A stretch of DNA of 64,000 bases, from assembly GCA_024679065.1 (NCBI GenBank), contig JAGIQG010000017.1, positions 57,846,001 through 57,910,000 of the forward strand. Direction: 5' to 3'. The stretch is from Sphyrna mokarran. Taxonomy: Eukaryota. A program made the translations under genes and the position numbers. Of this stretch, positions 3,421 through 60,029 are shown piece by piece (within the stretch, counting starts at the first letter, position 1; each line of letters opens with the position of its first letter). The notes beneath the pieces were generated by a model. It was given only the letters and a program-made list of their open reading frames with translations, made no database searches and was not told the DNA's origin.

Positions 3421-4230
3421 AAAAGGTGAAGTTCCCTGAATTGTTTATCCCATTCCAGATCTGGACTGAATAATGTTATTGAAACTTGAAGCAGGTATTT
3501 GCTTCTTTCATATTCCAAGTAGCAACGCTAAAACTCTTGAGGATTTTTATTCCGTTTTGCACGCGGCCGTTACATTTTCGTGATCCGTGCGCATGGACCT
3601 TTTGTAATGTGTTGTATGTTCATCTCCATTTAGATGTTTTGGGATGTATTGTTTCATTTCTGCTTGGAGAAATTTCAGAACGTTCATTCTTAACACGTTT
3701 CAGCGCCGAAAAAAAAATCAAGAATGTTGATTTTGTTTGATGCCTGGCAGTTAATCCGTCCCTGTGCAAATTCCATACGGTATTGATTCAGGTCCGCTTG
3801 TTGTGCATTCTGATATTTCCCTTCCCCAAACGTTAGTGGACAGCTTTGTTCAGAATTTATTGAGATAAACCAGCAGTCGATTTAATTTAAGGGGGAATTG
3901 GGAAGAGTGTTCCAAAGGAAAAGCTAATAAGCTGAACATATGTCGTGGGGAGAATAAACACAGACATAGATTGAACTTGATGAAGGATCTTTAATTATAG
4001 AATTTCTTAATGCAGAGGAAGGACATTCAACCCGCTGAGTTTCACCGACGGATGATCCAACCTGGTTGGACCCCACGTTTTTACCGCGATATTTTCCCTG
4101 ATCCTTACATTAAAGGACACCTGAGGGGAACCAGATTCAGAACCAACCATGGCAGAATTTAATTAAGTAAATGTGAGTATTTTCATTTTGATAATAATTC
4201 TTTGTGTTTTTGTGATTTGTTGTTGTTCAG

Positions 4231-4545
4231 CCCACAGATTTCCAAAACTGGTATCCGGAGCTTTCCCGTGCTCCGGCAGACTCGAGATCCATAACCATGT
4301 AGATTCGGGCACAGTGTGTGACATTGACTGGAGTTGGAATGACGCCAGTGTGGTCTGTGCTGAGCTTCATTGTGGAATCGCCGTTTCCATGAGAAGAGGG
4401 GCTTATTTTGGAGAGGGCACTGGACTTATATGGAACGATAGATTTGAATGTAAAGGCAGCGAGACAAGCCTGATGGACTGCCCCGTTGTTCCTGCAAATC
4501 GGTCCGAGTGCACCCACAGCAACGATGTCGGTGTGATCTGTTCCG
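4231..4545 (+). CDS. SRCR domain exon 1 (8 Cys, group B)
   Basis: TTCAG| ... TCCG|GTGAG, 315 nt, phase 1-1; HRFPKLVSGAFPCSGRLEI...GTVCD...VVCAELHCG...FECKGSE...CTHSNDVGVICS. Confidence 0.92.
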
Positions 4546-5527
4546 GTGAGTGCAGATTTATGAATATTAGAAAAAAATGTCAGCAGGAAGGATGACAATT
4601 CTTTTTTTCTCTCCCCCATGAAGATAGCTAACCAGACCTTCATATTTCATGTCATTTGCTGCAATTTTGGCTTATCATTTCACAGTATGTACTTTTTTTT
4701 TTTGCAAATCAGAAATGTTATTCATGTTCTGAAATTAGCAGATTATTATTATTGATTTAGTACCGTGGCCAATTTTATGGGTTTCTCTTAAACATTTGAT
4801 ATGACACTTTTTGTGTTATGTATTCGTGGTCTACCTCCCAAGTCATGAACCCATTGCATGGACTATCGCAGACCATAACATTGCTTGCATTTTGAATAGG
4901 ATACTGGCGCAGCAGAATAAAGGAAGTTTCTTTTTATTTTCAAATATCTTGCAACAACAAAAAAGTTGGATGAGCTCAGTAACAGCATTGCACTGCTTGT
5001 TTTACATCCACTTACCTGCTTTCAGGTGGAAACATTTACTAATTGTAGAGGAGATTTCAAATCATGAAGAACGTTTCAATAATGGGCATAACCTCCAGAT
5101 ACTACAGGATTTTTTCGAACGACATTTTTTAAAATTTTATTTTCTGAATTAACCGGTCCCAACTCCTTCCAAATTGGAGGTGAACTCACCATTTTATGCT
5201 CAACATATTGCGCAGAGGATATCGTTTTATAATTGCACCCTAATGCAATGCTTAAACTTCATGCACATTATGCAAAATATATCTGCAAAGACACTATACC
5301 CTGTCAATGGTAGATTATATTTTCTGTTCAGGATGGACTGTTCGATTTGGGTTGAAGCATCTTCCTAAAAGCATCACATATTATGATAACTAGTTCAATG
5401 TGATCATTTATGAATATTGAAAAAAAATGATTGCGGATGTTTACCCGTTTATACAAACATAAACTGGCATGTGTTCTTCTAATTTCGATGTATAAATTAT
5501 GTGAGTCTGTGTTTGCCCTTGAAACAG

Positions 5528-5842
5528 GAAACCATGGGCCGAGATTGGTTGGTGGAAAGGACAGGTGCTCCGGACGGGTGGAAGTACTGCATGGAGAACA
5601 CTGGGGGACGCTCTGTGATGTTTACTTTGGTTTCGAAGACGCCAGTGTGATCTGTGAACATCTTCAGTGTGGAGTGGTAGAGAAAATCCCAAGAGGGGCA
5701 GCCTTTGGGAAGGGAAATGGGATAATGTGGAAGGAGAACTACGACTGTGGCGGGATCGAGTCCCAGTTGTGGGAGTGCCCGGTTTCATCCGTGGAAGAGT
5801 TTAACTGCTCACATGAAAATGACGCCAGTGTCATCTGCTCGG
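5528..5842 (+). CDS. SRCR domain exon 2 (8 Cys)
   Basis: AACAG| ... TCGG|GTGAG, 315 nt; PRLVGGKDRCSGRVEVLHGEHWGTLCD...CSHENDASVICS. Confidence 0.93.
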
Positions 5843-6146
5843 GTGAGTCCTTAAATCAAGAAAATGAAAACACGTGATGCTGGGATTGAAGAGGATATTT
5901 CCACATTTTACCGTCCAAATGTTAGGCCATCCTTGAGTTCCACACATATATATTATCACTCTGCCTTTCAATGTATATGCTTCAGATATGGAGCAGCCGC
6001 ACTGGTTGTTCAGCCTCCTGATTGTCTATGTACAGCAGCTTCTCATCACATCCTTCAGCCGTGCAGTTGCTGTGGTGAAAGGTAACATTAATATAAGTTA
6101 ATTTGCTGTACTGTAACCACCGATTTCAATGTCTTTCTTCGCCTAG

Positions 6147-6461
6147 GTGAAAACTGGTCATTGAGATTAAGGAATGGGGGAAGTCGGTGTGATGGGCGAG
6201 TGGAGATTTACTACAACCACAGCTGGGGCAGAGTGCAGGACAGCCTCTGGGATCTGAATGACGCTAATGTCACCTGTAGACAGCTGGGCTGCGGAGAAGC
6301 GTTAACCGCCTATAACAATTCAAAGTACGGAGAGGGTGAAGGGCCTGTGTGGGTGAATGATGTCCGGTGTGAAGGAAATGAATCGCATCTCCGGAAGTGC
6401 AGCACATTCTCATTGAACCCACATCGCAGTGGCAGCATCGGCGTGGGGGTTCTGTGCTCAG
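6147..6461 (+). CDS. SRCR domain exon 3 (6 Cys; lacks Cys2 and Cys7)
   Basis: CCTAG| ... TCAG|GTGAA, 315 nt; LRLRNGGSRCDGRVEIYYNHSWGRVQD...GVGVLCS. Confidence 0.92.
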
Positions 6462-6899
6462 GTGAATAAACAGGTCACTTTTCCAGAAATATAAAGAGAA
6501 AAATATAATCTTGGTCATCTTCCTTTTCGGGAACACATGCGTGAGATATTTGACAATCGTGCTTGGGTGCAGGAAAAGACGCTCCGGGAAGAAAAAAAAA
6601 CATAACAGTTTGGAATATGATGATACAAACAATTTAATAAAATCAGTCAACAACTTTATACATCTCCAGGTTAATCCCTTCAGTAAATTGAAACCAACAA
6701 AGACAGTATCAGCAATGGAGAATAATGTGTTGATCATGGGGTGGGTTTTAACCGCACAGCGAAGGGAAAGTCACACTTAAGCATAAGATAAAATCTTATG
6801 CCCCAGTCACTAACATAAGGACGATTGAATAAGTATGAAGAAAGGCTTGCTGCATGAAGTGTCAGATGGGAAGGGAAGCCAAACTCTTAGTTAAAGTTA

Positions 6900-7130
6900 A
6901 TTTATTAGTAACATGTCAGATTTACATTAACACTGCAATGAAGTTACAGTTAAATTCCCCTAGTCACCCAGGACGCCGCTTGCTTGGGTCAAGGCACGAC
7001 TTTCAGAATGTGAGAGGTACCCGGAGGAAACCTATGTAGGCATGGGGAGAATGTACACAATCCACACAGACGGAGACTCAAGCCAGGAATCTAACCCAAG
7101 TCCCTGGCATTATGAAGCAGCAGTGCTACA
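6900..7130 (-). mobile_element. tRNA-derived SINE (HE1/V-SINE-like)
   Basis: Reverse complement of the tRNA-like head (AGCACTGCTGC...GGGACTTGGGTTAGATTCC) and the GGTTTCCTCCGGGT core. Confidence 0.75.
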
Positions 7131-8002
7131 GTGTGGAATAGACTCAGGAGTGCTGATTATCATGATCGCTAGGGTAGTGACCAAACTGTGAGCAATGGTG
7201 GAGAGCATAGATATCCTTAAACATGACCACGATATTTTGAAACTAGTTTGCTTCGACAGGAGAGAATCCAATGCAGATCAAATAGCCAGGGCTGGTAATG
7301 CTGTTGATCAGAAAGGGGGAAAGGGAGAGGATTGGGGAGGGAGTAAGTGTGAGTGCGGCTCTGTGCTTGCGCTGGTGCTCCTGGTGAGTTGGAATTTTCG
7401 CGGTTCATTGAGAAAAGTGTTGATTGTATTCCCGTGTTTTGGAGGGGTGGCCATCAGGGTAGAATCGAAACATGTATTCTTGAGATAACAAGAAACTGAT
7501 GATCATTTGAGCAGCAACTTGTGTGAGTTCTCAGGAAAGGTCAATGTCTGAAAGATCGAGTCGCTGCCAGCCTACTTGCATATTTGCAGTATTTCTGTTT
7601 TGTGTGAACTGGTGAAGCATCTGATGAAGTTTTCATGGCAAAATGAGTCAGTGAAAAAAGAAAGAAACTAATGTCTGCTGGAAACATTCATTCTGGAACA
7701 AATAATTATATACTTTGGATAAAGCAAAACAAGTAGCAATGAGTGGGTCAGATCCAAACCAGAACGTTCGGATGATATTCTCATTGGAAATATGAATATT
7801 TAGAAGATTTGTAAAGGCGCCATCATTTATTTTACCTTTGAACAGAAACTTCTTTTTTTTTCTAGAGCGTAGATCAATGTCCCTGTCAACGGCAGTTAAA
7901 ACGAAGGTTTTAATTTAGCTGCAAATTATAAAATAGGCTGAATTTAGCAACGGGATGAATGTGTTTAAGAAAAATAATCTGTCACTTCCATTATTCTATT
8001 AG

Positions 8003-8317
8003 AGCACACTCAGTTAAGACTCTCTGGCGGTGGGAGCCGATGTGCGGGCCGATTGGAGATTTATCACAATGGGACCTGGGGCTCAGTTTGTGATGATTCC
8101 TGGGATCTGACAGACGCTGACGTGGTTTGCAAGCAGTTGGATTGTGGACATGCATTGCGATTTCCTCTCCATATATCGACTGGACCTGATTCACAGCCAA
8201 TTTGGTTGGATGAGCTGGAATGCTCCGGGAGTGAAACATTTCTGTGGGAATGCCCCCATGCATTGTGGGGTAAACACGACTGTAATCATAAAAAAGATGT
8301 GAAGATCATGTGCTCTG
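8003..8317 (+). CDS. SRCR domain exon 4 (8 Cys)
   Basis: ATTAG| ... TCTG|GTAAA, 315 nt; LRLSGGGSRCAGRLEIYHNGTWGSVCDDSWD...CNHKKDVKIMCS. Confidence 0.93.
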
Positions 8318-9049
8318 GTAAATGTCCCAACTTCAGTTACATTAGAAGTTTCATACAAAAGATATATTCCTGACATGTCAAACGACTGCATTTGCGGATG
8401 TTCTTCTGTCAAATCCCTGTCTGTGTTATTTATTCTGGACACCATTTCCGTTACAATATTTCTATATCCTACTTTTGATGTGTTGTTTTATGTTTCTTTA
8501 TCCCTCATTTCTTGACATAAGCGCATCTTCCAGTTAATATCCCTGACTATTATGATCACGAGCCTTTAAATTCATCAGCTTATGTGTAAAATATTCCAGA
8601 AAACGACATCATTTTGCAAAGATATTTGATTTAATGATTATTTCTCAAGAAGCATGCTGCCACTTTATTCCTCGCATCAAAATTCACTCCATTCCACTTA
8701 GCAGTACGAAAACTAAGTTGTCATTGCCATCTGTATCCTGCTATATATTAACATTTTGATACATACTTTCCATTGCTCTTTGTTATTAACTATATAAACC
8801 AGTTTGCTGTTACAACAGAGGTTTTTTTTTATTTTACTGCCGATTGCAAAGTCCAGCTGCTTTTTGTAACTCCCAAGGAGCAGCGACCGCAGCACCAAAT
8901 TATGAACCTCACACCGGAAGATTTGCTACTTTAGAAACGAGAAACTTCACAGACTTTTTAAAATCTGCTTTTACACCGACTGCCTGGTTTCCCATTGTCT
9001 TTCGTAGACTTTCATTATGGAACTTGTGGAAGGTCTGCTATAAATTCGC

Positions 9050-9272
9050 GAAAGACTCTGACAACACCACATTTAATTTCAACCAATTTATTCGATAGTA
9101 TCATCACAAGCTTTCGAGGTTTGTCCTTTGTCAGGTGACGAAGGGGCACCTGACGAAGGGGCAAACCCCGAAAGCTTGTGAGTTTATAATCACATAAATT
9201 AATTGGACTTAAACCTGGTGATGGCAGGCTTCTTACTGTGCTTACCCCAGTCCAACGCCGACATCTCCACAA
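9050..9272. mobile_element. Penelope-like element remnant, head-to-head inverted pair with hammerhead-like core
   Basis: CTGACGA-A-GGGG-CAAA-CCCC-GAAAGCTT (9150-9177) followed by ...CCCCAGTCCAACGCCGACATCTCCACA; 9055-9137 is an inverted, diverged copy. Confidence 0.65.
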
Positions 9273-9526
9273 CGTTAATCTGCGCACAGAGCATCTATAG
9301 CATTGCTCCTTTCACCATTGCTGCAAGTTTTGCAAATAAATCAATCGGGTTCTTCGTTCAAATGTTTTGATTAAAATTTACTGTTGCTTATTCTTGATTT
9401 TCTCTGCTTATCTGTGACGTTTACAAAATAATTATGAGAAATTTGCGAACTCAAGTTAGAAACATATAGTGCATGAATACAGAACTGATGATTACACCAC
9501 GTGGTTATTTATGATTCGCTTGACAG

Positions 9527-9844
9527 AGCACAAAGAGCTACGTTTGGTGCAGGGAAAGCATCGTTGTGAGGGCAGAGTGGAAGTGTTCTATAACGGGATC
9601 TGGGGAACAGTTTGCTCTGAAAAGCTCGAGCAAGATGATGGAGCAGTGATCTGTAAACAGTTAGGTTGTGGCCCACTCGTTTCCATTGACTATGACGCTC
9701 GTTCATTCGGAGAAGGATCCGGACCTATTTGGTTGGATGAGGTCGAGTGCCTTTCACACGAGTCGACGCTTTGGCAGTGCCAGGCAGACCCGTGGGGTCA
9801 ACACAACTGTGAGCATCGGGAAGATGCAGGTGTCGTTTGTTCAG
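9527..9844 (+). CDS. SRCR domain exon 5 (8 Cys)
   Basis: GACAG| ... TCAG|GTAAC, 318 nt; LRLVQGKHRCEGRVEVFYNGIWGTVC...CEHREDAGVVCS. Confidence 0.93.
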
Positions 9845-9929
9845 GTAACACCATCAATCATTCTGCTTACAGGTGTGATTTAAAATATTGATGCAGCTCA
9901 TGGAGTCAGCATGTTTGTCTTATCGACAG

Positions 9930-9986
9930 GGGGAGACAAACCGAAGCAAGAGCAGGACGCTGTGAACGGCTGCAAGCGAAAATCAG
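9930..9986 (+). CDS. Short inter-domain linker exon of SRCR gene
   Basis: GACAG| ... TCAG|GTATT, 57 nt, phase 1-1, GGDKPKQEQDAVNGCKRKS. Confidence 0.7.
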
Positions 9987-10079
9987 GTATTTTCCAAACC
10001 TTAATAAAACAGCTATCTGATTGTATTTCTCTCTTGTCCTATATCAAAATTCATAATTTATTTGTTATCTTTGAAAAAA

Positions 10080-10374
10080 TTCTGCCAAAGTTTACACCTG
10101 CCTGGAGATAATAACAGCTGTTCCGTGAGAGTGGAGATATTGTGTAATGGAACCTGGGGCATGGCGTGTGATGATTCCAGGGTTTTGAACGATTCCAGTG
10201 CTGTCTGCAGACAGCTGGGCTGTGGCTCTGCTCTCGACACCACTGGAGGGCGCTCTTTTGGGCAGAGTAACGATATGATCTGGATGGATGTGGTGAAGCG
10301 CAACGGAAGAGAAGCATTTCTGTTTGACTTTCCTTCTTCGTCATTAACTCAAACCGACTATGATCACAAGGAAG
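10080..10374 (+). pseudogene. Decayed SRCR domain exon 6
   Basis: SLHLPGDNNSCSVRVEI...WGMACDD...VCRQLGCG; Cys5/6/7 replaced (VKRNG, FDFPS, TDYDHKE); no AG at the expected acceptor; cut before the final Cys by a SINE at ~10375. Confidence 0.85.
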
Positions 10375-10630
10375 GTAGAATCATAGAATCCTTCGGCCCA
10401 TTGAATGTGCACCGAACATAAGCCCACCAATCCCTACCTCCATATCCCTACATACTTTACCACTAATTCCTCAAACCTACGCATCCCTGGACACGAAGGC
10501 ACAATTTCTTAGGATGGCCAATCAACCTAACATGCACATCTTTGGACTGTGGGAGGAAACCGGAGTACCCCGAAGAAACCGAAGCAGACATGTGGAGATA
10601 TACATTTAGGCAGTGACCAAGCCGTGAATC
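10375..10630 (-). mobile_element. tRNA-derived SINE (HE1/V-SINE-like) interrupting SRCR exon 6
   Basis: CACATCTTTGGACTGTGGGAGGAAACCGGAGTACCC core; CR1-like tail at the left end. Confidence 0.75.
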
Positions 10631-26860: not shown

Positions 26861-28424
26861 AAGGAGCAGTTTGATAAAACCTCAAAGGCAGCAGGAAACA
26901 CCTGTGAATGAAATCACACAAACAATTAATCGCGCTGCGTGGTATTTTGCAGACTGCAGAGCGTAGTAACTCGAAGAGATAGAACAGGACAGATTAAAGC
27001 AGGAGATATTGAAAGAAAGAAATAGTGCAGGGAAGCATGGAATAAAATAGAAAACAAGAGTGAAGACAAGCCAGAATTCAAGAAACTAGGAAGGAGGATC
27101 AGAAAGAGCAGAAGAGTTTTCCAGGAATGTTAGCAGTCATATCAATTAGTTGGGTATATAGGCGAAGATGCGATCATTCTACTCAAGCAAGGGGTATTGA
27201 TGGGACAGGTACCCCACCTTGGAGCATCGTTAGTTAGAAGGTCAGACTAGAGCAACTGGGATTTCTTTCCCCAAAGCAGGGAAGATACAGGGATGAAAGT
27301 TATTCACAATAATGAGGGTCTTTAATTAGGAAAGAGAGAGCTTTCGTTAGACTTTAGTGGGTGAAATTAACATTACCATTCACAATTCAATCAGATACAG
27401 CAGTTACTTTTCAGCACATATAACAGTTGAGAATGGGAATGATGGATCCTGGGATCTCCTTCTGTTCTTCTCACAGGAATCTCAAAACACCCGGCCATGC
27501 TTGCAATTTGACCTTGGACTTTTTTTTCCCATGCCCAGAATCCCATCCATCAGGAGATTAGGCTGGATCTCACCAGAGTCTTCCAGTGGCGCCTGCCTCT
27601 ATAATGATGCATGGAATGGGCGCTCTTTTATAACCCTCACCCCCACCCCCCGCCAAATCGATGAAGAGGTCTAGGAAGTTCCGAGCAGCCACTGGAGTGT
27701 TCACTGCCCAGTCTACACCAAAACTGTCTCTTTCCCACTGTTACCCTCGCTATTGGGAGCAATCCAAAACCCTTCAATCCACAGCCAGTGGGATGACACA
27801 GAAGTGGCCGATTTACTCCACGTCCACATTCAATCGGGTGATTATTTCCCCTTCCCTCCTGGTCAAAATTTTAGCATTGAAAAGGAACCAACACTTAACT
27901 CAACTTTTAAAATTCATGTCGAATGATTTTTTTCTCCCTGAAACTATTACAAATCGGCCTTTCCTTGTTGTCCTGCTTTTATTTCTTCACTCATTCAATC
28001 CCGTTTTATCAGTCTCCTTCCTTTTCTCACTTTCACTGTTTATTACGTTCTGTCTCTGTTTTTTTTGCTCAGTCTGTCACTTTTCTGTCTGTGGGTCTTT
28101 TCACAATCTTCCCATCTCTCGAAAGCCTCAGTCAGAATTCTTTGCCTGGAATTATCGATCACTCTCTGTTATTTATGGGTTTGTTTTCACTCCCTGATCA
28201 GGGAAAGCTTTGTGAGCAATTTAAACAAAGCGGCAGGGTTTTTAAGCAATTCCTGCCTGCTCCTTGCACTTTGCTCGCAGGAAGAGCAGCAACGTCTCTC
28301 ATTTAGCTGCAGTGCCAAGAGCGGCCGCCGCGGCGCTCTCACGCTCTATATGACGAGCCAGTTTCTTGTAGAAATCAGCTCAAAGACATTTGAGATCAAA
28401 AGAAAGCTGAATCTTACGCGGAGA

Positions 28425-28470
28425 ATGTTCACCATTTCTTGGTTTTCCGTATTCGTGTTGTCCAATGTCT
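28425..28470 (+). pseudogene. Leader (L1) exon of antigen-receptor V segment
   Basis: 46 nt, MFTISWFSVFVLSNV+T|GTATGT; phase 1 joins the V exon as ...NVYVDS, a typical L1/L2 split. Confidence 0.8.
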
Positions 28471-28756
28471 GTATGTACTAGATAGCAGAAACACCTGTTT
28501 TTTTTTTAATCGACACTTGCTGAATATAATGACGACATTTTGTGTTTGTTGACAGATTCTAGTGAACGCAATACAAATAATTCACTGGTCTTTAATCCGC
28601 TAAATTGTCATCATGCTGGCTCAATGCGTCCCAGCCATTGCAATTTTTCTTCTTTCAGAACTACCCCCCCCCCCCACCGGAATCTGCCTTGGAACAAGTT
28701 AGGAGTTTGGCAAATTAATTGTTTAAATGTTGACTAATTGACTTACTTGGATGAGC

Positions 28757-29040
28757 AATAGAATGCTACAGTGCAGAATGAGGCCACTCAACCCATGGAG
28801 TCTGCACTAACTTACTCAGACCCGCAGAACCCCACTGACCCTAAGTGACAATTGGACACGGCCAATCCGCCCAACCCACACATCATTGGAGTGTGGGAGG
28901 AGACGGGAGCACCCGGAGGAAACCCACGCAGATACGGGGAGAACGTGCAAGCTCCACACACAGACATTGTCCCACTCGGGAATCAGATGAGGGTAATTGG
29001 TGCTGTGTGGCAGCAACGCTAACCATTGTGTCGCCACAGA
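28757..29040 (-). mobile_element. tRNA-derived SINE in the V leader intron
   Basis: GGAGCACCCGGAGGAAACCCACGCAGATACGGGGAGAACGTGCAAGCTCCACAC core. Confidence 0.85.
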
Positions 29041-29167
29041 ATGTAGCAATGTTACTGCAGAAAACCAATCTATTTATTGATCTTTCCCTCTCTTTACTTT
29101 GTCCCATGTTCAGTTGATCATTTTGTCTCCTGACTGAACTGCTGCCCTGTTTTAATTATCTTATTAA

Positions 29168-29465
29168 ATGTTGACTCCAAGCACTTAGTCGCCCAGTTTC
29201 CATCGACAATGACTCTGTCTCCACGGGAGGAAACCGCTTTCTACTTGCAGCATCTGGCAGGGGAACGTGACCGATTATTGGTTGCACTAGTACATCCAGA
29301 GCAGTGACCAAATTGAGTGGGTTAGACCCGGGGTACTGTCTTCATCTAGGGGCAGAAAACGAATGGATGTCAAGCACGGCCCTCAGAACAACGAGTTCAC
29401 CCTGTTCGTGAAGGACTCCCAGATCGAAGACAGCGGCACATATTACTGTGTGTCCTACAACGATG
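29168..29465 (+). pseudogene. Antigen-receptor V exon (pseudogene), inverted relative to TRBC
   Basis: VDS-KHLVAQFPSTMTLSPREETAF/(frameshift ~29240)/TCSIWQGNVTDYWLH*YIQSSDQIEWV...RMDVKHGPQNNEFTLFVKDSQIEDSGTYYCVSYND; conserved Trp is TAG (29288-29290); acceptor reads AA (29166-29167). Confidence 0.9.
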
Positions 29466-29504
29466 CACAGCGTTACAAGAATGCAAAGTCTTCCAACTAA
29501 AACT
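29466..29504 (+). promoter_or_regulatory. 23-bp-spacer recombination signal sequence
   Basis: CACAGCG (29466-29472) + exactly 23 nt + ACTAAAACT (29496-29504), directly after the YYC end of the V exon. Confidence 0.92.
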
Positions 29505-29679
29505 GCCCGCGGCAGAAAGAAACCTGCCTCAGTCTCCAGACAGTAATTCCGTAACTGGAATGGGGAATCTGGATGCGTTGGATCACAGGAGTTCAAATTC
29601 GCGTGGCCGCTGAAGAATTTCACTCCATTCACTTCAGGCGGTGGGTGCAGCTGTATCATCTGTAAAATACACTTTAAAA

Positions 29680-36642: not shown

Positions 36643-36776
36643 NNNNNNNNNNNNNNNNNNNNNNNNNNNNNNNNNNNNNNNNNNNNNNNNNNNNNNNNNN
36701 NNNNNNNNNNNNNNNNNNNNNNNNNNNNNNNNNNNNNNNNNNNNNNNNNNNNNNNNNNNNNNNNNNNNNNNNNNNN
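36643..36776. other. Assembly gap (134 N)
   Basis: Run of N next to a degenerate (TG)n tract. Confidence 0.99.
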
Positions 36777-37329
36777 CACTGTGCGAGTGTTTATGTATCA
36801 GTGTGTGTGTATCTGTGTGTGTATCTGTGTGTGTGTGTGTGTGTGGTGCATCTGTGTGTCAGTGTGTGCATGACTGTGTGGGTGTTTGTGTATCGATGGA
36901 TGTATCATTGTGTGTGTGTGTGTCTGCACGTGTATATTGGTGTCTGTGTGTGTGTGTGTGTATCTGTATTTGTGCATTTGTATGTGTGTTTATACCTATG
37001 TATGCATCTGTGTGAGTGTGTGTATACCAGTGAGTGTATCAGTGTGTGTATCTGTGTGTATGTGTGAATATACCTGTGTATGTAACTGTGTGAGTGTGTG
37101 TGTACCAGTAAGTGTATCAGTGTGTGTATCTATGTGTGTATCACTCTGTGAGGTGGTCTGCTTAAGTATTTGGGTGCATGTGAAAGTTTACAAAGAACAA
37201 AGAACAAAAAGCAACACAGCACGGGAAACAGGCCCTTCGGCCCAACGAGCCCACGCCGCCGTCCTAACGTCCTAATGATATATCCTTGTCTTTAGGCTAT
37301 GCCTAAAGTATGTGTGTCTTTACTCTGCA

Positions 37330-50399: not shown

Positions 50400-50690
50400 T
50401 CCTCACATTCCTGTGTAGAGATGGAGCAGGTGCAGCGGCTCAGAAACAGTTTGTACCTCGGAGGAAATGAGAGAGCAGCATCTCAGTGAGGCAGTCTGCA
50501 AAATGACAGCTCCCTGGGGACAGCTGGCGCATTCCGTTAAACCACAGTGTGAAACCTGGGCCCATAACCCACTTTAGAAACTGTGAGATGCGCCTGCCAG
50601 CTCAAAGCTCCACCGCATTCTTTGCAAGCTCAGGTCCCACGGTTTCCGGTATACTATTTTTTTTCTCTCTGTGCAGCTGCTCAATGTCTT
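50400..50690. promoter_or_regulatory. Candidate TCR-beta 3' enhancer
   Basis: E-boxes (50427, 50521, 50674), ETS cores (50406, 50461, 50530, 50643), RUNX AACCACA (50540) and ACCGCA (50612), TCF-like CTCAAAG (50601) in ~290 bp, about 4 kb 3' of TRBC. Confidence 0.5.
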
Positions 50691-54468: not shown

Positions 54469-54495
54469 TCAGTCAAACCTTTTGCTATAAAACAT
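54469..54495 (-). CDS. TRBC: TRBC exon 4 (cytoplasmic tail)
   Basis: TTTTACTAG|ATG TTT TAT AGC AAA AGG TTT GAC TGA = MFYSKRFD*. Confidence 0.88.
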   Translation of the reverse strand: MFYSKRFD

Positions 54496-57400
54496 CTAGT
54501 AAAACAAACAAACAAACAAAAACAGTCAGCCTTACCACAATTTTAAATCAGAATCGTACAGCCCAAAAGGGGGCCAATCTGAAAATTCATTGGCATTTCA
54601 AAAGGAGTTGACAATTCATACCAATTGCCTGCTGTCTGGTCCCGCTCCCCACAAGTGTAAACGTAACAACATTTTTAAAAGTTAGTATTGAATGTATTTC
54701 TACCTGTTTCTGGCAGTGCTTTCCAGATAGTGACAACTCTCTGCATGAAAGTATTTCCACATCTTTCCCATCTTCCCCCTTTCCTTACTTGATCCATTAT
54801 TTTATATCGGCGTCCTTTTATTCCTGACTACATTTTTTCTTTTCCTTACTTACACATGGGTCTCAGCCACTTGCACTTATGTTACATTCAACACTTTCTG
54901 CACTTCTAACATCATTCTTTCCCACTCCTGTCAGAGTCATGATAGAATTCTGCTTTATCCCTGGCACGGCACTCAAAGGGTTTTCTCCACCCAACTTCAA
55001 CAGAATACCACCCACCAAACACATTACCTTCTAACTTCCCTGTTAGCATTCGTGATCCTTTCTCTCCTTAATCCACAAGGATGATCCAAACGCGATTGTT
55101 CGCTATTTCAATTCACACCTTCTTCTCATGCTCAGATTTCTGCCCCTGTTGCAATGTTCCAACAGCTCAAGTTGGAAAAAATCATCTTCTAATTCGCAAC
55201 ACAACACTGAATTTAACAACCTTGGGTCATAATCTAAGTCCTCCATTTTGCACTGCTGTCAGCCTGAATGTTTAACTGATATTTTGCTTTTAAGTCAAAT
55301 AGTCACAGTGGGATGAACTGTATTCAATTCGTGGATAATCGGAGCGAGGAAGTGTTTTTTTATTGAGTTCCATACAAGAAAGATCAGAAACTCCAGGTGC
55401 TTTAATATAGAAAGTCAATGGCTCATCAAACGTATTTTAACCACAGAACTAGTTAGAATTGCCACCGCATGGAGCGAGTGAATCGAATAGCATAAATAAT
55501 TTAATGGCAGAAGACAGATATGCAAATAGACGGTCAGGGAATCAGAGGGTCACTGTGAAGAGGTTAGTTATAGTGGGATGGGACAACTGTGGTGTTTAAA
55601 CAGAGGTATGCACCTTAGGATCCATGAATCTATTTGAGTCGATGAGGTAATTCATATGCTCTTATTTTCCACATTTTTTTCATGAAAGCATACATGAGTT
55701 TCTCCACCAAGGCCATGCAAAATGCAACAGTTGGGATGAAAGATGGGTTGGACTTTTCTTTCCCGCTGAAGAAAATCTATAGGCTGTCATTAAATGTATG
55801 CGGGAGTACCAGCGATTGCAGGAAAACCATAACTGTTCATGGCTTGACTACAAAAAAAAAGTTTAAGTTTTAGGCTGTATATTTTGCCATACTTAGTTTA
55901 ATCTTACCTTAGTTTTCCAACCAAGTACTGAGATGAACACGCCATAAAAGATGCTTTTGCAGATAAGGATCAGGTATGTTAACTTTCCTGTTTGTCTGCT
56001 TTGCATTTTAGCCTCTGTGAAGTAAATATAAAGAACAATTTGGAATTTCTATTCTCTTCTACTGTTTGGAAATAGAACATATCTTCATTTCAGGATCCCA
56101 GTGTACGAGTTGAGCTGTAGAAATACAATATTTCACATTTATGCGTGGAGTTGATTGAGGTCCACTTCATTATATTAAGTCCACTTTTACAATATTGTAT
56201 GTTCAATTAGCAGAACTTCTATTTGTTGTACCACTATCCCCCAAAAATGAAGCAATATATGAATTGGTAACTAAAAAGTGCATGGATCGGGAGTTTGTGC
56301 AACCAGTAAGGAGCTTTCCCCTTCTGAATAGTAATTATGCAATCAATCCCTACTCCAGATCCCTATAAGTGGTGTTGGACAATCATTCTTTCATATGAGA
56401 TGTTAAACTAATAATATGCCTGCCCCTTCCAGAGAATGTAAGTTATCCAGTACAGTGTTTTCCACTGTTCTCTGGGCCTCAACTTATTCCTTAACCAATG
56501 TCACAAAAAGAAGATGATTTCGTCATATATTTCTTGCCATTTGGGGTGAAACCAGTTTCTGTGATCATCAAAATATTGCTGTGACTAAACCTTCAATGGA
56601 TTTCATTGACTACTATGAACTTTGAGATGTTATGTGACCCTAAAACACTTTACTTTTTAAAGGGTATAATTGTGTCTGCGTCTTCTGTGCCAAAATTGAA
56701 CTATAATCTCACAGAACGAAGTTTTGTGACACTACTGTTCCTTTAATAAGTGCATATTCATGATGTTTCTCTGCAATTCTTTTAGGAGCATCTGCCATTT
56801 TGTGTTGTTTGCTGACCTGTCTCAGTCTATGTATTTTGATTGTTGATGGAATTATATAGTAGGCTGTTTGTTTAGTTTCAATTTGGCTTAATGCACCGTC
56901 CTGGAGTTTGAATTATCAGGGCAAGAATGATTCACAGGTCAGGTCAAACAGTTCTGTTTCTTACAAGAGAACTTCATTTTCTCTTCGGCTAGCTTGTAGC
57001 TGCGAGGACTGAATATTCCGAGAAATACCTGCTGTTTGTAATTTTTATAAATGATCTGGATGAGGGTATTGAGGGATGGATCAGTAAATTTGCAGATGAC
57101 ACTAAAGTTGGTGGAGAGGTAGATAGTGAAGAGGGGTGTTATAGTTTACAGAGTGACTTGGACAAGTTGTAGAGCTGGGCCGAGAGGTGGCAAATGGAGT
57201 TTAATGTGGAAAAGTGTGAGGTAATGCACTATGGCAGAAACAATAAATGTGTAGAGTATAGGGCAAATGGTAGGACTCTTAATAGTCTAGATGAACAGAA
57301 GGATCTTGGTGTATATGTCAATAGATCCCTGAAAGTAGGCAGTCAAGTCGATAAAGTTGTTAAGAAGGCATATGGAGTCTTAGCTTTTATTGGTAGAGGG

Positions 57401-60029
57401 ATTGAATTTAGGAGCCGCAACATCATGTTGCAACTGTACAAAACTCTAGTGCGGCCGCACTTGGAGTATTGTGTGCAGTTCTGGTCGCCACATTATAAGA
57501 AAGATGTGGAGGCATTGGAGAGGGTACAGAGGAGGTTTACCAGGATGTTGCCTGGTATGGAGGCAGGTCCTATGAAGAGAGGTTGAAGGATTTGAGGTTG
57601 TTTTCGTTAGAAAGGAGGCGGCTAAGAGGGGATCTTATTGAAGCATATAGGATGATTAGAGGTTGAGATAGGGTGGACAGTGATAGCCTTTTTCCTAGGA
57701 TGGAGAAAGCTAGCACGATGGGACACAGCTTTAAATTAAGGGGTATGAGTTATAGGACGGATATCAGAGGTAGGTTCTTTACTCAAAGAGTGATTAGGGA
57801 GTGGAATGCCCTGCCTGCAGCTGTTGTAGATGCGCCAAGTTTGGTGGCGTTTAAGAGGTTTATTGATAAGTATATGGAAGAGAAGGGAATGGTTTAGTTT
57901 GGAGGGGCATTGCTTTTTATTTTGGTCGGCACAACATCGAAGGCCGAAGGGCCTGTTCTGTGCTGTAATGTTCTATGTTGTATGTTCTAAATATTTCAGT
58001 GTCTCTCTCTCTCTGGTATTGGAAGTTTAGCTCTTGGAAGCTGATTGCAAAGGATGCAAACGTGATTCAAGAATTTTTTTTCAAGAAGCAAGTGCTTCAG
58101 ATTTGGGATGTATTGCCTGGAAGTGCGTCGAAGGCAAATTCATTCGAAACATTGAAAAGGAATTTGTGTCATTATTTTGATATACATCTTGTGCAGAGGT
58201 TCAGAAAAGGGCTGGGGAATGACACTAAGTCATGATACTTATTTGGACAGCCAATGCAGACACAATGGATCGAATGGCCTCCATCTGTGACCTAACGATT
58301 CTGTGAGCTGTGATGATATGGTGCCTTTAAGAAAAAATGTTTATCTCATGCTTCTTGTCAGAGGTTGTTTGCATTTCAGATCTGTTTTGCAGGGTGCTGA
58401 TTTGTTTATGACAAGATTAAATTTCTAGCTGGGAGAACAAGATAAATATTCATTTTAGACATAGAGTGCTTATTTAAGAAGCACTAGTGTATTTCTGTAT
58501 AATTATGTTCCCATGGGTTTTCACAGAAGAGTTTAGATTAGATTGATTTGTAGGGATATATTTTTTCACCGTCTGAAGGAAACTCCCATTCCTCCCAATA
58601 TGTGGTGCCCAGATGCAGCTCGGAGAATATGGTGACTTACCTTTACTTAAACCACAGATTTCTGAAAAAAAGAGGAAAATATATGTGTTTAGCTTCTGAT
58701 ACTTTAAGGGATTTCTGTGTTATCACAGTTGTAAGCTGTTTTCAATCTGTTACCTTGCGACAGTCACTAAAATATAAGTTTTGACATTGTTCACGGGTAC
58801 ATTTGATCTGTGTGATTGTTTATTTATCTATTTATTGATCTACAGATTCGTGTATTGATCAATGAGTAGAGCACAGGAGCCATGCAAGATACAGCTTTCT
58901 TCAAAGCTAAAGTGGAATGGCAGAAATAATAAATGTGTAGAGTATAGGGCAAATGGTAGGATTCTTAGTAGTCTAGATGAACAGAGGGATCTTGGTGTGT
59001 ATGTGCATAGATCCCTGAAAGTAGGCAGTCAGGTCGAGAAGGTTGTTAGGAAGGCATATGGAGTCTTAGCTTTTATTGGTAGAGGGATTGAATTTCGGAG
59101 CCGCAACGTCACGTTGCAACTGTACAAAACTCTAGTGCGGCCGCACTTGGAGTATTGGGTGCAGTTCTGGTCCCCACATTATAAGAAAGATGTGGAGGCA
59201 TTGGAGAGGGTACAGAGGAGGTTTACCAGGATGTTGCCTGGTATGGAGGGCAGGTCTTATGAAGAGAGGCTGAGGGATTTGAGGTTGTTTCGTTAGAAAG
59301 GAGGAGGCTAAGAGGGGACCTTATCGAAACATATAAGATGATTAGAGGTTTAGATAGGGTGGACAGTGATAGCCTTTTTCCTAGGATGGGAAAAGCTAGC
59401 ACGAGGGGACACAGCTTTAAATTAAGGGGTGATAGTTATAGGACGGATATCAGAGGTAGGTTCTTTACCCAAAGGTGGTTCGGGAGTGGAATGCCCTGCC
59501 TGCGGCAGTTGTAGATGCGCCAAGTTTGGTGGCGTTTAAGAGGTTAGTTGATAAGTTAATGGAAGAGAAGGGAATGGTTTAGTTTGGAGGGGCATTGCTT
59601 TTTATATTGGTCGGCGCAACATCGAAGGCCGAAGGGCCTGTTCTGTGCTGTAATGTTCTATGTTCTATGGTATAGTAGGCCTACCAGCGTTGATGTAAAT
59701 CATGCCCATGTGGATGTATGGTGTTGATCCTTTAGCATAGTGCTTCACTTCACACTTGACCACTTTCGATTTGACCCAGTCTTTAGTCGTGAATCGAAGG
59801 CGACTGCTGATACTGAAGGACTTGTTCCCATCTACTGAGACTGAACTGAGATCGGTCTGAATGCTTGAGTCACTGGCCTTCCTTTCCTCACCATCGACAA
59901 ACCAGCTGATCTGGATATTGTCAGGGTAGAAGTCAGATACAAGACAAACCACTGTCGCGTTCTCCTTCTCTTTTATCTCTTCGGGAGAGGGTTCAAAGAT
60001 CGTAACTGTGGCATTCTTAATCTCATGTT
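54469..60029 (-). CDS. TRBC: T-cell receptor beta constant region gene, four exons, intact
   Basis: Exons 60029-59685, 58661-58641, 56014-55908 and 54495-54469 all have AG/GT, splice in frame (phases 1,1,1,0) and give C1-set Ig domain, Cys connecting peptide, Lys-containing TM and short tail. Confidence 0.93.
55908..56014 (-). CDS. TRBC: TRBC exon 3 (transmembrane)
   Basis: TCACAG| (E)[35 protein letters not shown] |GTAAGA; conserved TY...K...Y TCR-beta TM pattern. Confidence 0.93.
57028..57988 (+). mobile_element. CR1 subfamily A in TRBC intron 2
   Basis: From [11 protein letters not shown] to the tail. Confidence 0.93.
58641..58661 (-). CDS. TRBC: TRBC exon 2 (connecting peptide, interchain Cys)
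   Basis: TTTTTCAG|AA ATC TGT GGT TTA AGT AAA G|GTAAGT = (E)ICGLSK(E), 21 nt. Confidence 0.9.
58918..59668 (+). mobile_element. CR1 subfamily A in TRBC intron 1
   Basis: ORF2 C-terminus and tail ending about 15 nt from the exon 1 donor. Confidence 0.93.
59685..60029 (-). CDS. TRBC: TRBC exon 1 (Ig C1-set domain)
   Basis: CACACAG| (E)[42 protein letters not shown]...[10 protein letters not shown]....VKCEVKHY...INA |GTAGGC; the FEPSxxEI, FYPD and SSRLR motifs are diagnostic of C-beta. Confidence 0.96.

What the first reader, a model, noticed from the sequence alone, without database searches (positions are those of the whole stretch)
28425..29504. Inverted V segment with intact 23-RSS about 25 kb downstream of TCR-beta C
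Seen: leader exon, V exon ending DSGTYYC and CACAGCG-23-ACTAAAACT on the plus strand, 3' of and facing a minus-strand TRBC. The ORF track misses it because of a frameshift and a stop. Established: mammalian TRB has a single inverted V 3' of C (human TRBV30, mouse Trbv31) that rearranges by inversion, with the enhancer between C and V. Inference: the same C-enhancer-inverted V layout in a shark-like genome would mean this architecture dates to early jawed vertebrates or arose twice.
Basis: partly seen in the sequence, partly recalled or inferred. Interest (0 to 1): 0.85.

Follow-up and report, generated by a model that had tools for sequence, protein, structure and literature searches.

The report
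Dead inverted V segment behind shark TCR-beta C
A broken antigen-receptor V gene segment with a usable-looking recombination signal lies head-on to the 3' end of a shark T-cell-receptor beta constant gene, the layout known from land vertebrates, but this copy is dead and does not look like a typical V-beta.

Summary
On the + strand there is a leader exon (28425-28470), a V exon (29168-29465) and a heptamer-23-nonamer signal (29466-29504). On the minus strand lies a four-exon TCR-beta constant gene (60029-54469). Its stop codon is 24,965 bases from the signal, and the two genes converge.

This copy is a pseudogene. It carries TAG at the conserved Trp codon, one extra base before Cys23, and AA where related copies read the AG splice acceptor. 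A high-copy repeat sits in the leader intron. Contigs of a public DNA run reproduce these lesions exactly. They also show three related copies, about 81-91% alike, that read TGG.

The V-beta label is not supported. The FR2-FR3 piece drew 0 TCR-beta rows among the 60 best solved-structure matches. The same piece of a genuine shark V-beta drew 32 of 60.

A 134-N run lies between V and C, so order and orientation are untested. No RNA run was available, and the tool for checking other sharks' loci was closed.

The scan had noted this same stretch before (s1-887217), not on other DNA.

Verdict: most likely a decayed inverted 3' V of the shark TRB locus, a new member of a known kind. The deep-ancestry inference remains unproven.

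The parts
28425..28470 (+). Leader exon (L-PART1): ATG plus 15 codons and 1 base, ending in phase 1 before the donor GTATGT at 28471-76
   Evidence: Sequence and translation. Related copies in run X1 share this stretch (rec1 28419-28566 with 8 differences; rec6 aligned up to 28548).
28471..29167 (+). Leader intron, 697 bases, holding a high-copy interspersed repeat (about 28723-29051 by depth)
   Evidence: Depth is 4e3 to 2.8e6 in bins 28723-29051 of X1, against 12-50 beside them. No tRNA or Rfam match. One related copy aligns to 28548 and resumes at 29120.
28713..28735 (+). First copy of a 23-nt imperfect direct repeat (13 nt exact) that duplicates the intron/V-exon boundary; the second copy is at 29154-29176
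   Evidence: the repeat finder family D1, 83% identity, spacing 441. Whether it is a target-site or a local duplication is not resolved.
29166..29167 (+). Lost splice acceptor: AA here, AG in two related copies
   Evidence: 29167 A>G in 2 contigs, depth 21.6 of 32.3. An exon start at 29168 gives the canonical 11-base L-PART2 in the frame of the FR1 piece.
29168..29465 (+). V exon: L-PART2 at 29168-78, V region from 29179. It reads KHLVAQFPSTMTLSPREETAFY, then a frame break, CSIWQGNVTDYWLH, a stop, and YIQSS...DSGTYYCVSYND
   Evidence: Translations. Pfam V-set E 3.4e-06 for the last piece. X1 rec3 and rec7 are identical to the window.
29244..29245 (+). One extra base that shifts the frame just before the Cys23 codon (29246-48)
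   Evidence: 'Left out 1' at 29244 (rec6) and at 29245 (rec4) in related copies. Frames.
29288..29290 (+). TAG stop in place of the conserved Trp codon
   Evidence: Translation WLH*YIQ. 29289 A>G in all 3 related contigs, depth 33.5 of 44.3.
29466..29504 (+). Recombination signal: heptamer CACAGCG, 23-base spacer, nonamer ACTAAAACT (6 of 7 and 7 of 9 matches to consensus)
   Evidence: A relative's contig (X2 rec15, 29424-29646) covers it at 10 differences in 223 with no gaps.
36643..36776 (.). Run of 134 N between V and C, beside a GT-rich imperfect microsatellite
59685..60029 (-). TRBC exon 1 (Ig C1-set domain)
   Evidence: 74% identity to the Mustelus asterias protein named T cell receptor beta chain (P0001, E 1.4e-50). 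Pfam C1-set E 4.2e-22. Splice sites read.
58641..58661 (-). TRBC exon 2 (EICGLSK hinge with the interchain Cys)
   Evidence: tblastn with P0001 and the sequence itself.
55908..56014 (-). TRBC exon 3 (transmembrane, ...[15 protein letters not shown]...)
   Evidence: tblastn 84% identity to P0001, E 1.7e-16. Splice sites.
54469..54495 (-). TRBC exon 4 (MFYSKRFD and the TGA stop)
   Evidence: P0001 and P0002 also end SYSKRFD.

Best explanation
This is a genuine germline V gene segment lying tail-to-tail with the TCR-beta constant gene. It has a leader, a phase-1 intron, a V-set exon and a 23-spacer recombination signal. Its signal points at the 3' end of TRBC from 25 kb away.

A V in this position can join an upstream D-beta 12-signal only by inverting the DNA between them, as the 3' inverted TRBV of tetrapods do. 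That step is inferred from the geometry and the 12/23 rule, not shown.

The window copy cannot make a chain. It has lost its splice acceptor, carries a one-base insertion before Cys23, and has a stop at the conserved Trp. I read it as a decayed, or allelically dead, inverted 3' V of the shark TRB locus. It belongs to a V subgroup with at least three further copies in the genome that lack these lesions.

The subgroup is not of the ordinary V-beta type by sequence.
For: - The anatomy of a V segment and its signal is present.
- The lesions appear in independent contigs of run X1: rec3 and rec7 show 0 differences over 435 and 214 nt.
- Three related copies, 81-91% alike, read TGG at 29288-90. Two of them lack the extra base and read AG at the acceptor.
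- TRBC is identified by 74% identity to Mustelus TCR beta (exon 1) and 62% to a Pristiophorus TCR beta whose V hits TCR beta chains in the PDB. It has four exons of the expected kinds.
- No J-like motif, no other V, no other C1-set exon and no other signal lies on either strand of the 64 kb. The only partner in view is therefore the TRB cluster.
- At least 11,428 of the 24,964 bases between C and V are LINE coding remnants, so the spacing is inflated by insertions.
- A relative (organism B) keeps the V end, the signal and 140 nt of flank at about 95.5%.
- Inverted 3' TRBV are described for amniotes, axolotl and newt (passages read).
Against: - The FR2-FR3 piece drew 0 TCR-beta rows among the 60 best PDB rows. 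It drew 11 alpha, 1 delta, 11 light-chain and 8 pIgR rows. The control shark V-beta piece drew 32 of 60 beta rows.
- BLASTP against that shark V-beta found only 6 of 18 identities in FR3, E 0.068.
- A 134-N run lies between V and C, so order and orientation are unproven.
- No RNA run holds the V, so there are no V-DJ-C joins.
- Where the related copies sit is unknown.
- The word-index protein search for the V piece was blank. The exhaustive search was swamped by giant Ig-repeat proteins.
- It is not known whether this TRBC is the last one in the locus.
Confidence: 0.55

Rival explanations
1. The V is an orphon: a stray, decaying copy from another receptor family (alpha/delta-like or light-chain-like) that was duplicated into the DNA behind TRBC and was never part of the beta repertoire.
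For: - 0 of 60 best PDB rows are TCR beta, while 11 are alpha, 1 delta and 11 light chain. The control V-beta behaves as beta.
- In the printed alignment of 8y0y_E, the kappa-type FR3 domains score 12.2 and 10.9 bits against 2.7 and 3.9 for the VH-type domains.
- The copy carries three lesions and sits among LINE debris.
- It is solitary, with no V array around it.
Against: - Landing within 25 kb of TRBC, with the signal facing it, would be a coincidence.
- The Atlas gives the V piece the same neighbour clusters as the true shark V-beta control, including one named a TVB29 fragment (0.91 against 0.94).
- An unchecked scan note (s1-886588) reports another atypical V upstream of the beta D-J cluster on the same piece of DNA.
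Confidence: 0.25
2. The V belongs to a second recombination unit of opposite orientation, as in the salmonid or newt arrangements. Its own D-J-C would lie outside the window.
For: Salmonids and pike have paired V-D-J-C loci in opposite orientation. Newts have inverted V clusters interspersed among six C-J-D units (passages). The window shows only one C and no D or J.
Against: Nothing on the + strand downstream of the V, up to TRBC, looks like a J or a C. The V is single and dead. What lies beyond the window was not visible.
Confidence: 0.1
3. The layout is an assembly artefact: the piece carrying the V (1-36642) is misplaced or flipped at the N run.
For: There are 134 N at 36643-36776 next to a GT-rich low-complexity array. 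The surrounding DNA is full of near-identical LINE copies.
Against: The N run may be a mask rather than a gap. There is no positive sign of a misjoin. Contigs of X1 confirm the local V sequence only, not the join.
Confidence: 0.1

Closest known systems
3' inverted TRBV of amniotes
   Same: A V with a 23-spacer signal lies 3' of TRBC in opposite transcriptional orientation, so joining must be by inversion (passages of PMC11754216, PMC5278385 and PMC10464911).
   Different: Here the copy is a pseudogene and does not score as V-beta. The distance is 25 kb, nearly half of it LINE remnants. Membership of the tetrapod 'inverted' clade was not tested.
Inverted TRBV clusters of salamanders (axolotl cluster A; three clusters in Pleurodeles waltl)
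   Same: Inverted V lie next to or among C-J-D units. They are expressed, and so rearrange by inversion (PMC12698447 passages).
   Different: Those are multi-gene, expressed clusters of TRBV families. Here there is a single dead V and no expression data.
Inverted V behind the delta constant gene, cited with the beta one as a mark of an ancient cis duplication of TCR loci
   Same: The same C-then-inverted-V geometry. PMC12227049 uses it as an argument for common ancestry of the beta and delta loci (passage).
   Different: The constant gene here is beta by homology. The V's alpha/delta-like score is a resemblance only.
V pseudogenes and orphons of antigen-receptor loci
   Same: A stop codon, a frameshift, a lost splice site and a repeat insertion, with a still-recognisable signal.
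   Different: The position and orientation relative to TRBC are specific. Related copies without the lesions exist.

Membership tests
Germline rearranging V gene segment (Ig/TCR) | Leader exon, phase-1 intron, then a V exon that starts with a short L-PART2 | tested here: met
   L-PART1 is 28425-28470 and the donor GTATGT is at 28471. An exon start at 29168 gives an 11-base L-PART2 in frame with FR1. The acceptor reads AA here and AG in two related copies.
Germline rearranging V gene segment (Ig/TCR) | V-set domain with Cys23, the conserved Trp and the second Cys in a YYC motif | tested here: met
   Pfam V-set 27.7 bits against a cut-off of 26. Cys is the 23rd residue of the V region. The Trp codon position is occupied by TAG here and by TGG in 3 related copies. 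DSGTYYC is present.
Germline rearranging V gene segment (Ig/TCR) | Recombination signal directly abutting the V end | tested here: met
   CACAGCG, a 23-base spacer and ACTAAAACT at 29466-29504.
Germline rearranging V gene segment (Ig/TCR) | Open reading frame (a functional segment) | tested here: not met
   TAG at 29288-90, an extra base at 29244/45, and a lost acceptor. All are confirmed in X1 contigs.
TRBV (TCR beta variable) | Lies in the TRB locus | tested here: met
   The signal is 24,965 bases from the TRBC stop codon in the window as assembled. This is subject to the N run at 36643-36776.
TRBV (TCR beta variable) | 23-spacer signal compatible with the 12-spacer 5' signal of D-beta | tested here: met
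   The spacer is 23 bases. D-beta itself is outside the window and was not seen.
TRBV (TCR beta variable) | Sequence groups with V-beta rather than other V classes | tested here: not met
   0 of 60 best PDB rows are TCR beta (11 alpha, 1 delta, 11 light chain, 8 pIgR). The same piece of the Pristiophorus TCR beta gives 32 of 60. FR1 is uninformative, because the control also hits light chains. The Atlas does not discriminate. No shark V reference set was available, so this is a coarse test.
TRBV (TCR beta variable) | Found joined to D-beta/J-beta/C-beta in transcripts | not testable with these tools
   No RNA run holds the stretch.
3' inverted TRBV (TRBV30/Trbv31 type) | 3' of the (last) TRBC, in opposite orientation, with the signal facing C | tested here: met
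   The V is on the + strand at 29.2-29.5 kb and TRBC on the minus strand at 54.5-60.0 kb. Whether this is the last TRBC is unknown.
3' inverted TRBV (TRBV30/Trbv31 type) | Rearranges by inversion and is expressed | not testable with these tools
   There are no RNA runs. The window copy is a pseudogene.
3' inverted TRBV (TRBV30/Trbv31 type) | Falls in the clade of inverted TRBV in V phylogenies | not tested
   No reference sequences of that clade were within reach. The supplements of PMC11754216 that list accessions are closed.
TRBC (TCR beta constant gene) | C1-set exon closest to TCR beta constants, plus a hinge-Cys exon, a transmembrane exon with a conserved Lys, and a short tail exon | tested here: met
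   Exon 1 is 74% identical to Mustelus asterias TCR beta and 62% to Pristiophorus japonicus TCR beta. Exons 2-4 were mapped. The names are the sources' automatic ones. The Pristiophorus protein's V hits TCR beta chains.

The most novel reading that the evidence does not exclude
The shark TRB locus holds a V subgroup that is not of V-beta type (light-chain/alpha-like by FR2-FR3), placed around the D-J-C unit and including an inverted 3' position. The copy 'V-prime' seen in run X1 has the same intron insertion, an identical 3' part, an AG acceptor, TGG and no frameshift. In this reading it is the live allele of this very locus.

Shark beta chains would then draw on a second V lineage by inversional joining. 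The C-then-inverted-V layout would predate the split of cartilaginous and bony vertebrates, as the cis-duplication model of TCR loci expects.
Probability: 0.12. Interest if true: 0.8.

Novelty: new member of a known kind. Interest (0 to 1): 0.45.

Why it matters
An inverted V behind C-beta is documented for amniotes and salamanders. It is used as an argument that the beta and delta loci arose by an ancient cis duplication (PMC11754216 and PMC12227049, passages read).

My 7 searches of the held library found no map of a cartilaginous-fish TRB locus that shows one. Subscription journals are not covered.

A shark example would push the layout to the base of jawed vertebrates, or show that it recurs. 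As it stands, the example is a single dead V of uncertain class in one assembly. It makes the question testable in shark genomes but does not answer it.

Tried and rejected
- **Rejected: 'IgH-like V' (scan note s1-887217).** In the one printed multi-domain alignment, VH-type FR3 domains score 2.7 and 3.9 bits against 12.2 and 10.9 for kappa-type domains. One row of the 60 (6zqk_A) is named a heavy chain, but it is 469 residues long and its match lies at 323-347.
- **Rejected as evidence: light-chain hits of the FR1 piece.** There were 4 of 4, at E 0.48-2.4. The FR1 of a true shark V-beta also hits light chains.
- **Rejected as evidence: the Atlas 'TVB29 fragment' lead.** The control shows the same clusters for a real V-beta, so the search does not separate V classes.
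- **Led nowhere:**
  - The word-index search for the V piece was blank.
  - The exhaustive representative search gave 240 hits at E up to 0.001, and all 150 listed proteins are far longer than a single V domain (254-7602 residues), most of them matched at several stretches; they are unnamed.
  - The middle piece had no PDB hit.
  - There was no tRNA or Rfam match in the intron repeat.
  - The findings search by sequence was blank.
- **Considered: a light-chain or gamma cluster downstream of the V.** No J motif and no C1-set exon lies on the + strand.
- **Considered: the 23-nt direct repeat as a target-site duplication of the intron repeat.** The right copy lies about 100 bases beyond the high-depth block, and that stretch is shared with a related copy. 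This is left open.
- **Not done:**
  - I did not examine the proposed enhancer.
  - Supplements are closed. The accession tables of PMC11754216 for nurse-shark TRBV could have given references for a V tree.

Full report
**What is there.** On the + strand an ATG at 28425 opens a 15-codon hydrophobic leader. It ends, one base into the next codon, before GTATGT at 28471.
- The V exon runs from 29168 to 29465. It has an 11-base L-PART2, then a V region read in three pieces. The first is KHLVAQFPSTMTLSPREETAFY. The second, in the next frame, is CSIWQGNVTDYWLH. After a TAG comes YIQSSDQIEWV...FTLFVKDSQIEDSGTYYCVSYND.
- Cys is the 23rd residue of the V region, and the stop sits where the conserved Trp belongs.
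- The last piece passes Pfam V-set (E 3.4e-06, 27.7 bits against 26).
- The heptamer CACAGCG, a 23-base spacer and the nonamer ACTAAAACT follow at once (29466-29504).
- A consensus scan with 3 mismatches finds 2 such sites in the window against 0.83 expected, so the motif alone is not significant.
- The motif is, however, the only heptamer-nonamer pair in my relaxed scan, and it abuts the only YYC-type V end in 64 kb.

**Lesions, checked in reads.** One DNA run (X1, organism A) holds 0.92 of the sampled words. A second (X2, organism B) holds 0.06. No RNA run was listed.
- Laid at 80% likeness, two X1 contigs match the window without any difference: rec3 (28931-29365) and rec7 (29336-29549). 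The stop and the frame break are therefore not assembly slips.
- Three other contigs are related copies. These are rec4 (33 differences and 2 gaps in 363), rec5 (24 in 119 and 38 in 206) and rec6 (37 in 195).
- All three read G at 29289, which gives TGG.
- rec4 and rec6 leave out one base at 29245 and 29244 respectively, and read G at 29167, which gives an AG acceptor.
- Relative to its kin, the window copy therefore has three lesions: a lost acceptor, a one-base insertion before Cys23, and a stop at the Trp codon.
- Whether the kin are open throughout is an inference. Their full sequences were not shown.
- The leader intron (697 bases) contains a repeat at depths up to 2.8e6. It has no tRNA or Rfam match.

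**An unresolved twin.** rec2 and rec4 reach into the repeat-bearing block, so that copy shares the insertion.
- rec4 and the window-identical rec3 end at the same base and run into rec7. The depth of rec7 (20.9) is about the sum of theirs (10.7 + 8.7).
- This copy is either the other haplotype of this locus or a very recent duplicate.
- If it is allelic, the inverted position would carry a possibly live V.
- I could not decide this.

**The constant gene and the geometry.** Exon 1 on the minus strand (60029-59685) is 74% identical to a Mustelus asterias protein that its source names T cell receptor beta chain.
- It is 62-67% identical to Pristiophorus and Carcharodon relatives.
- Exons 2, 3 and 4 follow at 58661-58641, 56014-55908 and 54495-54469.
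- The Pristiophorus protein carries a V whose FR2-FR3 piece hits TCR beta chains in the PDB. This supports the beta identity of the constant family independently of the automatic names.
- The V signal ends 24,965 bases from the TRBC stop, and the two genes converge.
- At least 11,428 of those bases are LINE endonuclease or reverse-transcriptase remnants.
- The window's only N run (134 N, 36643-36776), next to a GT-rich array, lies in between.

**Nothing else in view.** There is no J-like FGxG motif outside SRCR and LINE frames. There is no second V end, no second C1-set exon and no other signal on either strand. D-beta and J-beta must lie beyond 64 kb. An unchecked scan note places a beta D-J cluster and another atypical V there (s1-886588).

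**What class of V?** For the 59-residue FR2-FR3 piece, the 60 best PDB rows include 11 TCR alpha, 1 delta, 11 light-chain and 8 pIgR rows, and no TCR beta.
- As a control, the same piece of the Pristiophorus TCR beta gives 32 of 60 rows named TCR beta, aligned end to end.
- BLASTP of the two shark pieces finds only 6 of 18 identities.
- The spacing from the Trp position to the second Cys is 53 residues here and 56 in the control. I recall 53 as usual for light chains, but I did not test that.
- FR1 is uninformative, because both it and the control hit light chains.
- The Atlas returns the same fragment clusters for both pieces.
- The V is therefore not a typical V-beta. With no shark reference set, I cannot say which class it is.

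**Literature.** I read passages, not whole papers.
- PMC11754216: inverted 3' TRBV are shared by many amniotes and form their own clade. The inversion is also reported in salmonids and some amphibians.
- PMC12698447: three inverted, expressed TRBV clusters in a newt.
- PMC5278385: one inverted V-beta in duck.
- PMC10464911: paired opposite loci in salmonids.
- PMC12227049: the inverted V behind both beta and delta C is cited for a cis duplication of TCR loci.
- PMC6795676: cartilaginous-fish TCR genes are in translocon arrangement.
- Seven searches turned up no cartilaginous-fish TRB map with an inverted V. The library lacks most subscription journals, and supplements were closed.

**Reading.** The most likely reading (0.55) is a decayed, or allelically dead, inverted 3' V of the shark TRB locus. 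A live copy there would join D-beta by inversion, which is inferred from the geometry and the 12/23 rule. The rivals are:
- an orphon of another V class (0.25);
- a V of a second, opposite unit outside the window (0.1);
- a scaffold error at the N run (0.1).

Noticed in passing
window 4173-10421 (+): Six ORF-sized exons of scavenger receptor cysteine-rich (SRCR) domains sit in a row on the + strand. Pfam SRCR gave E 4.3e-26, 1.4e-33 and 4.3e-27 for the three tested. This is a multi-SRCR gene flanking the far side of the V.
   Followed up: partly
window, whole: At least 26,546 of 64,000 bases are LINE coding remnants (AP-endonuclease plus reverse transcriptase), in both orientations. Some sit inside TRBC introns (57029-57894, 58919-59579).
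   Followed up: partly
window 36794-37142: A GT-rich imperfect microsatellite/minisatellite (periods 2, 12, 14 and 78) lies directly right of the 134-N run.
   Followed up: no
window 50543-50570 (+) and 3728-3766 (-): These are lone signal-like matches: a 12-spacer with a perfect CACAGTG, and a 23-spacer. Each has 3 mismatches, is at chance level, and has no coding end beside it.
   Followed up: no
X1 contigs on window 28537-29365: A twin copy of the V shares the intron insertion and has an identical 3' part, but has an intact acceptor, Trp codon and frame. It is either an allele or a recent duplicate.
   Followed up: partly
P0154 (Carcharodon carcharias), P0002 and P0155 (Scyliorhinus torazame): The Carcharodon protein that its source names 'immunoglobulin kappa light chain-like' contains two J-like FGxGTKL motifs followed by a TCR-beta-like C domain. 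It looks like a J-C read-through model of TRB. S. torazame has two distinct TRBC-like proteins, 64% and 54% identical to this exon 1.
   Followed up: no
window 28713-28735 and 29154-29176: A 23-nt imperfect direct repeat (13 nt exact) duplicates the intron/V-exon boundary around the repeat-bearing block. Its origin is unresolved.
   Followed up: partly
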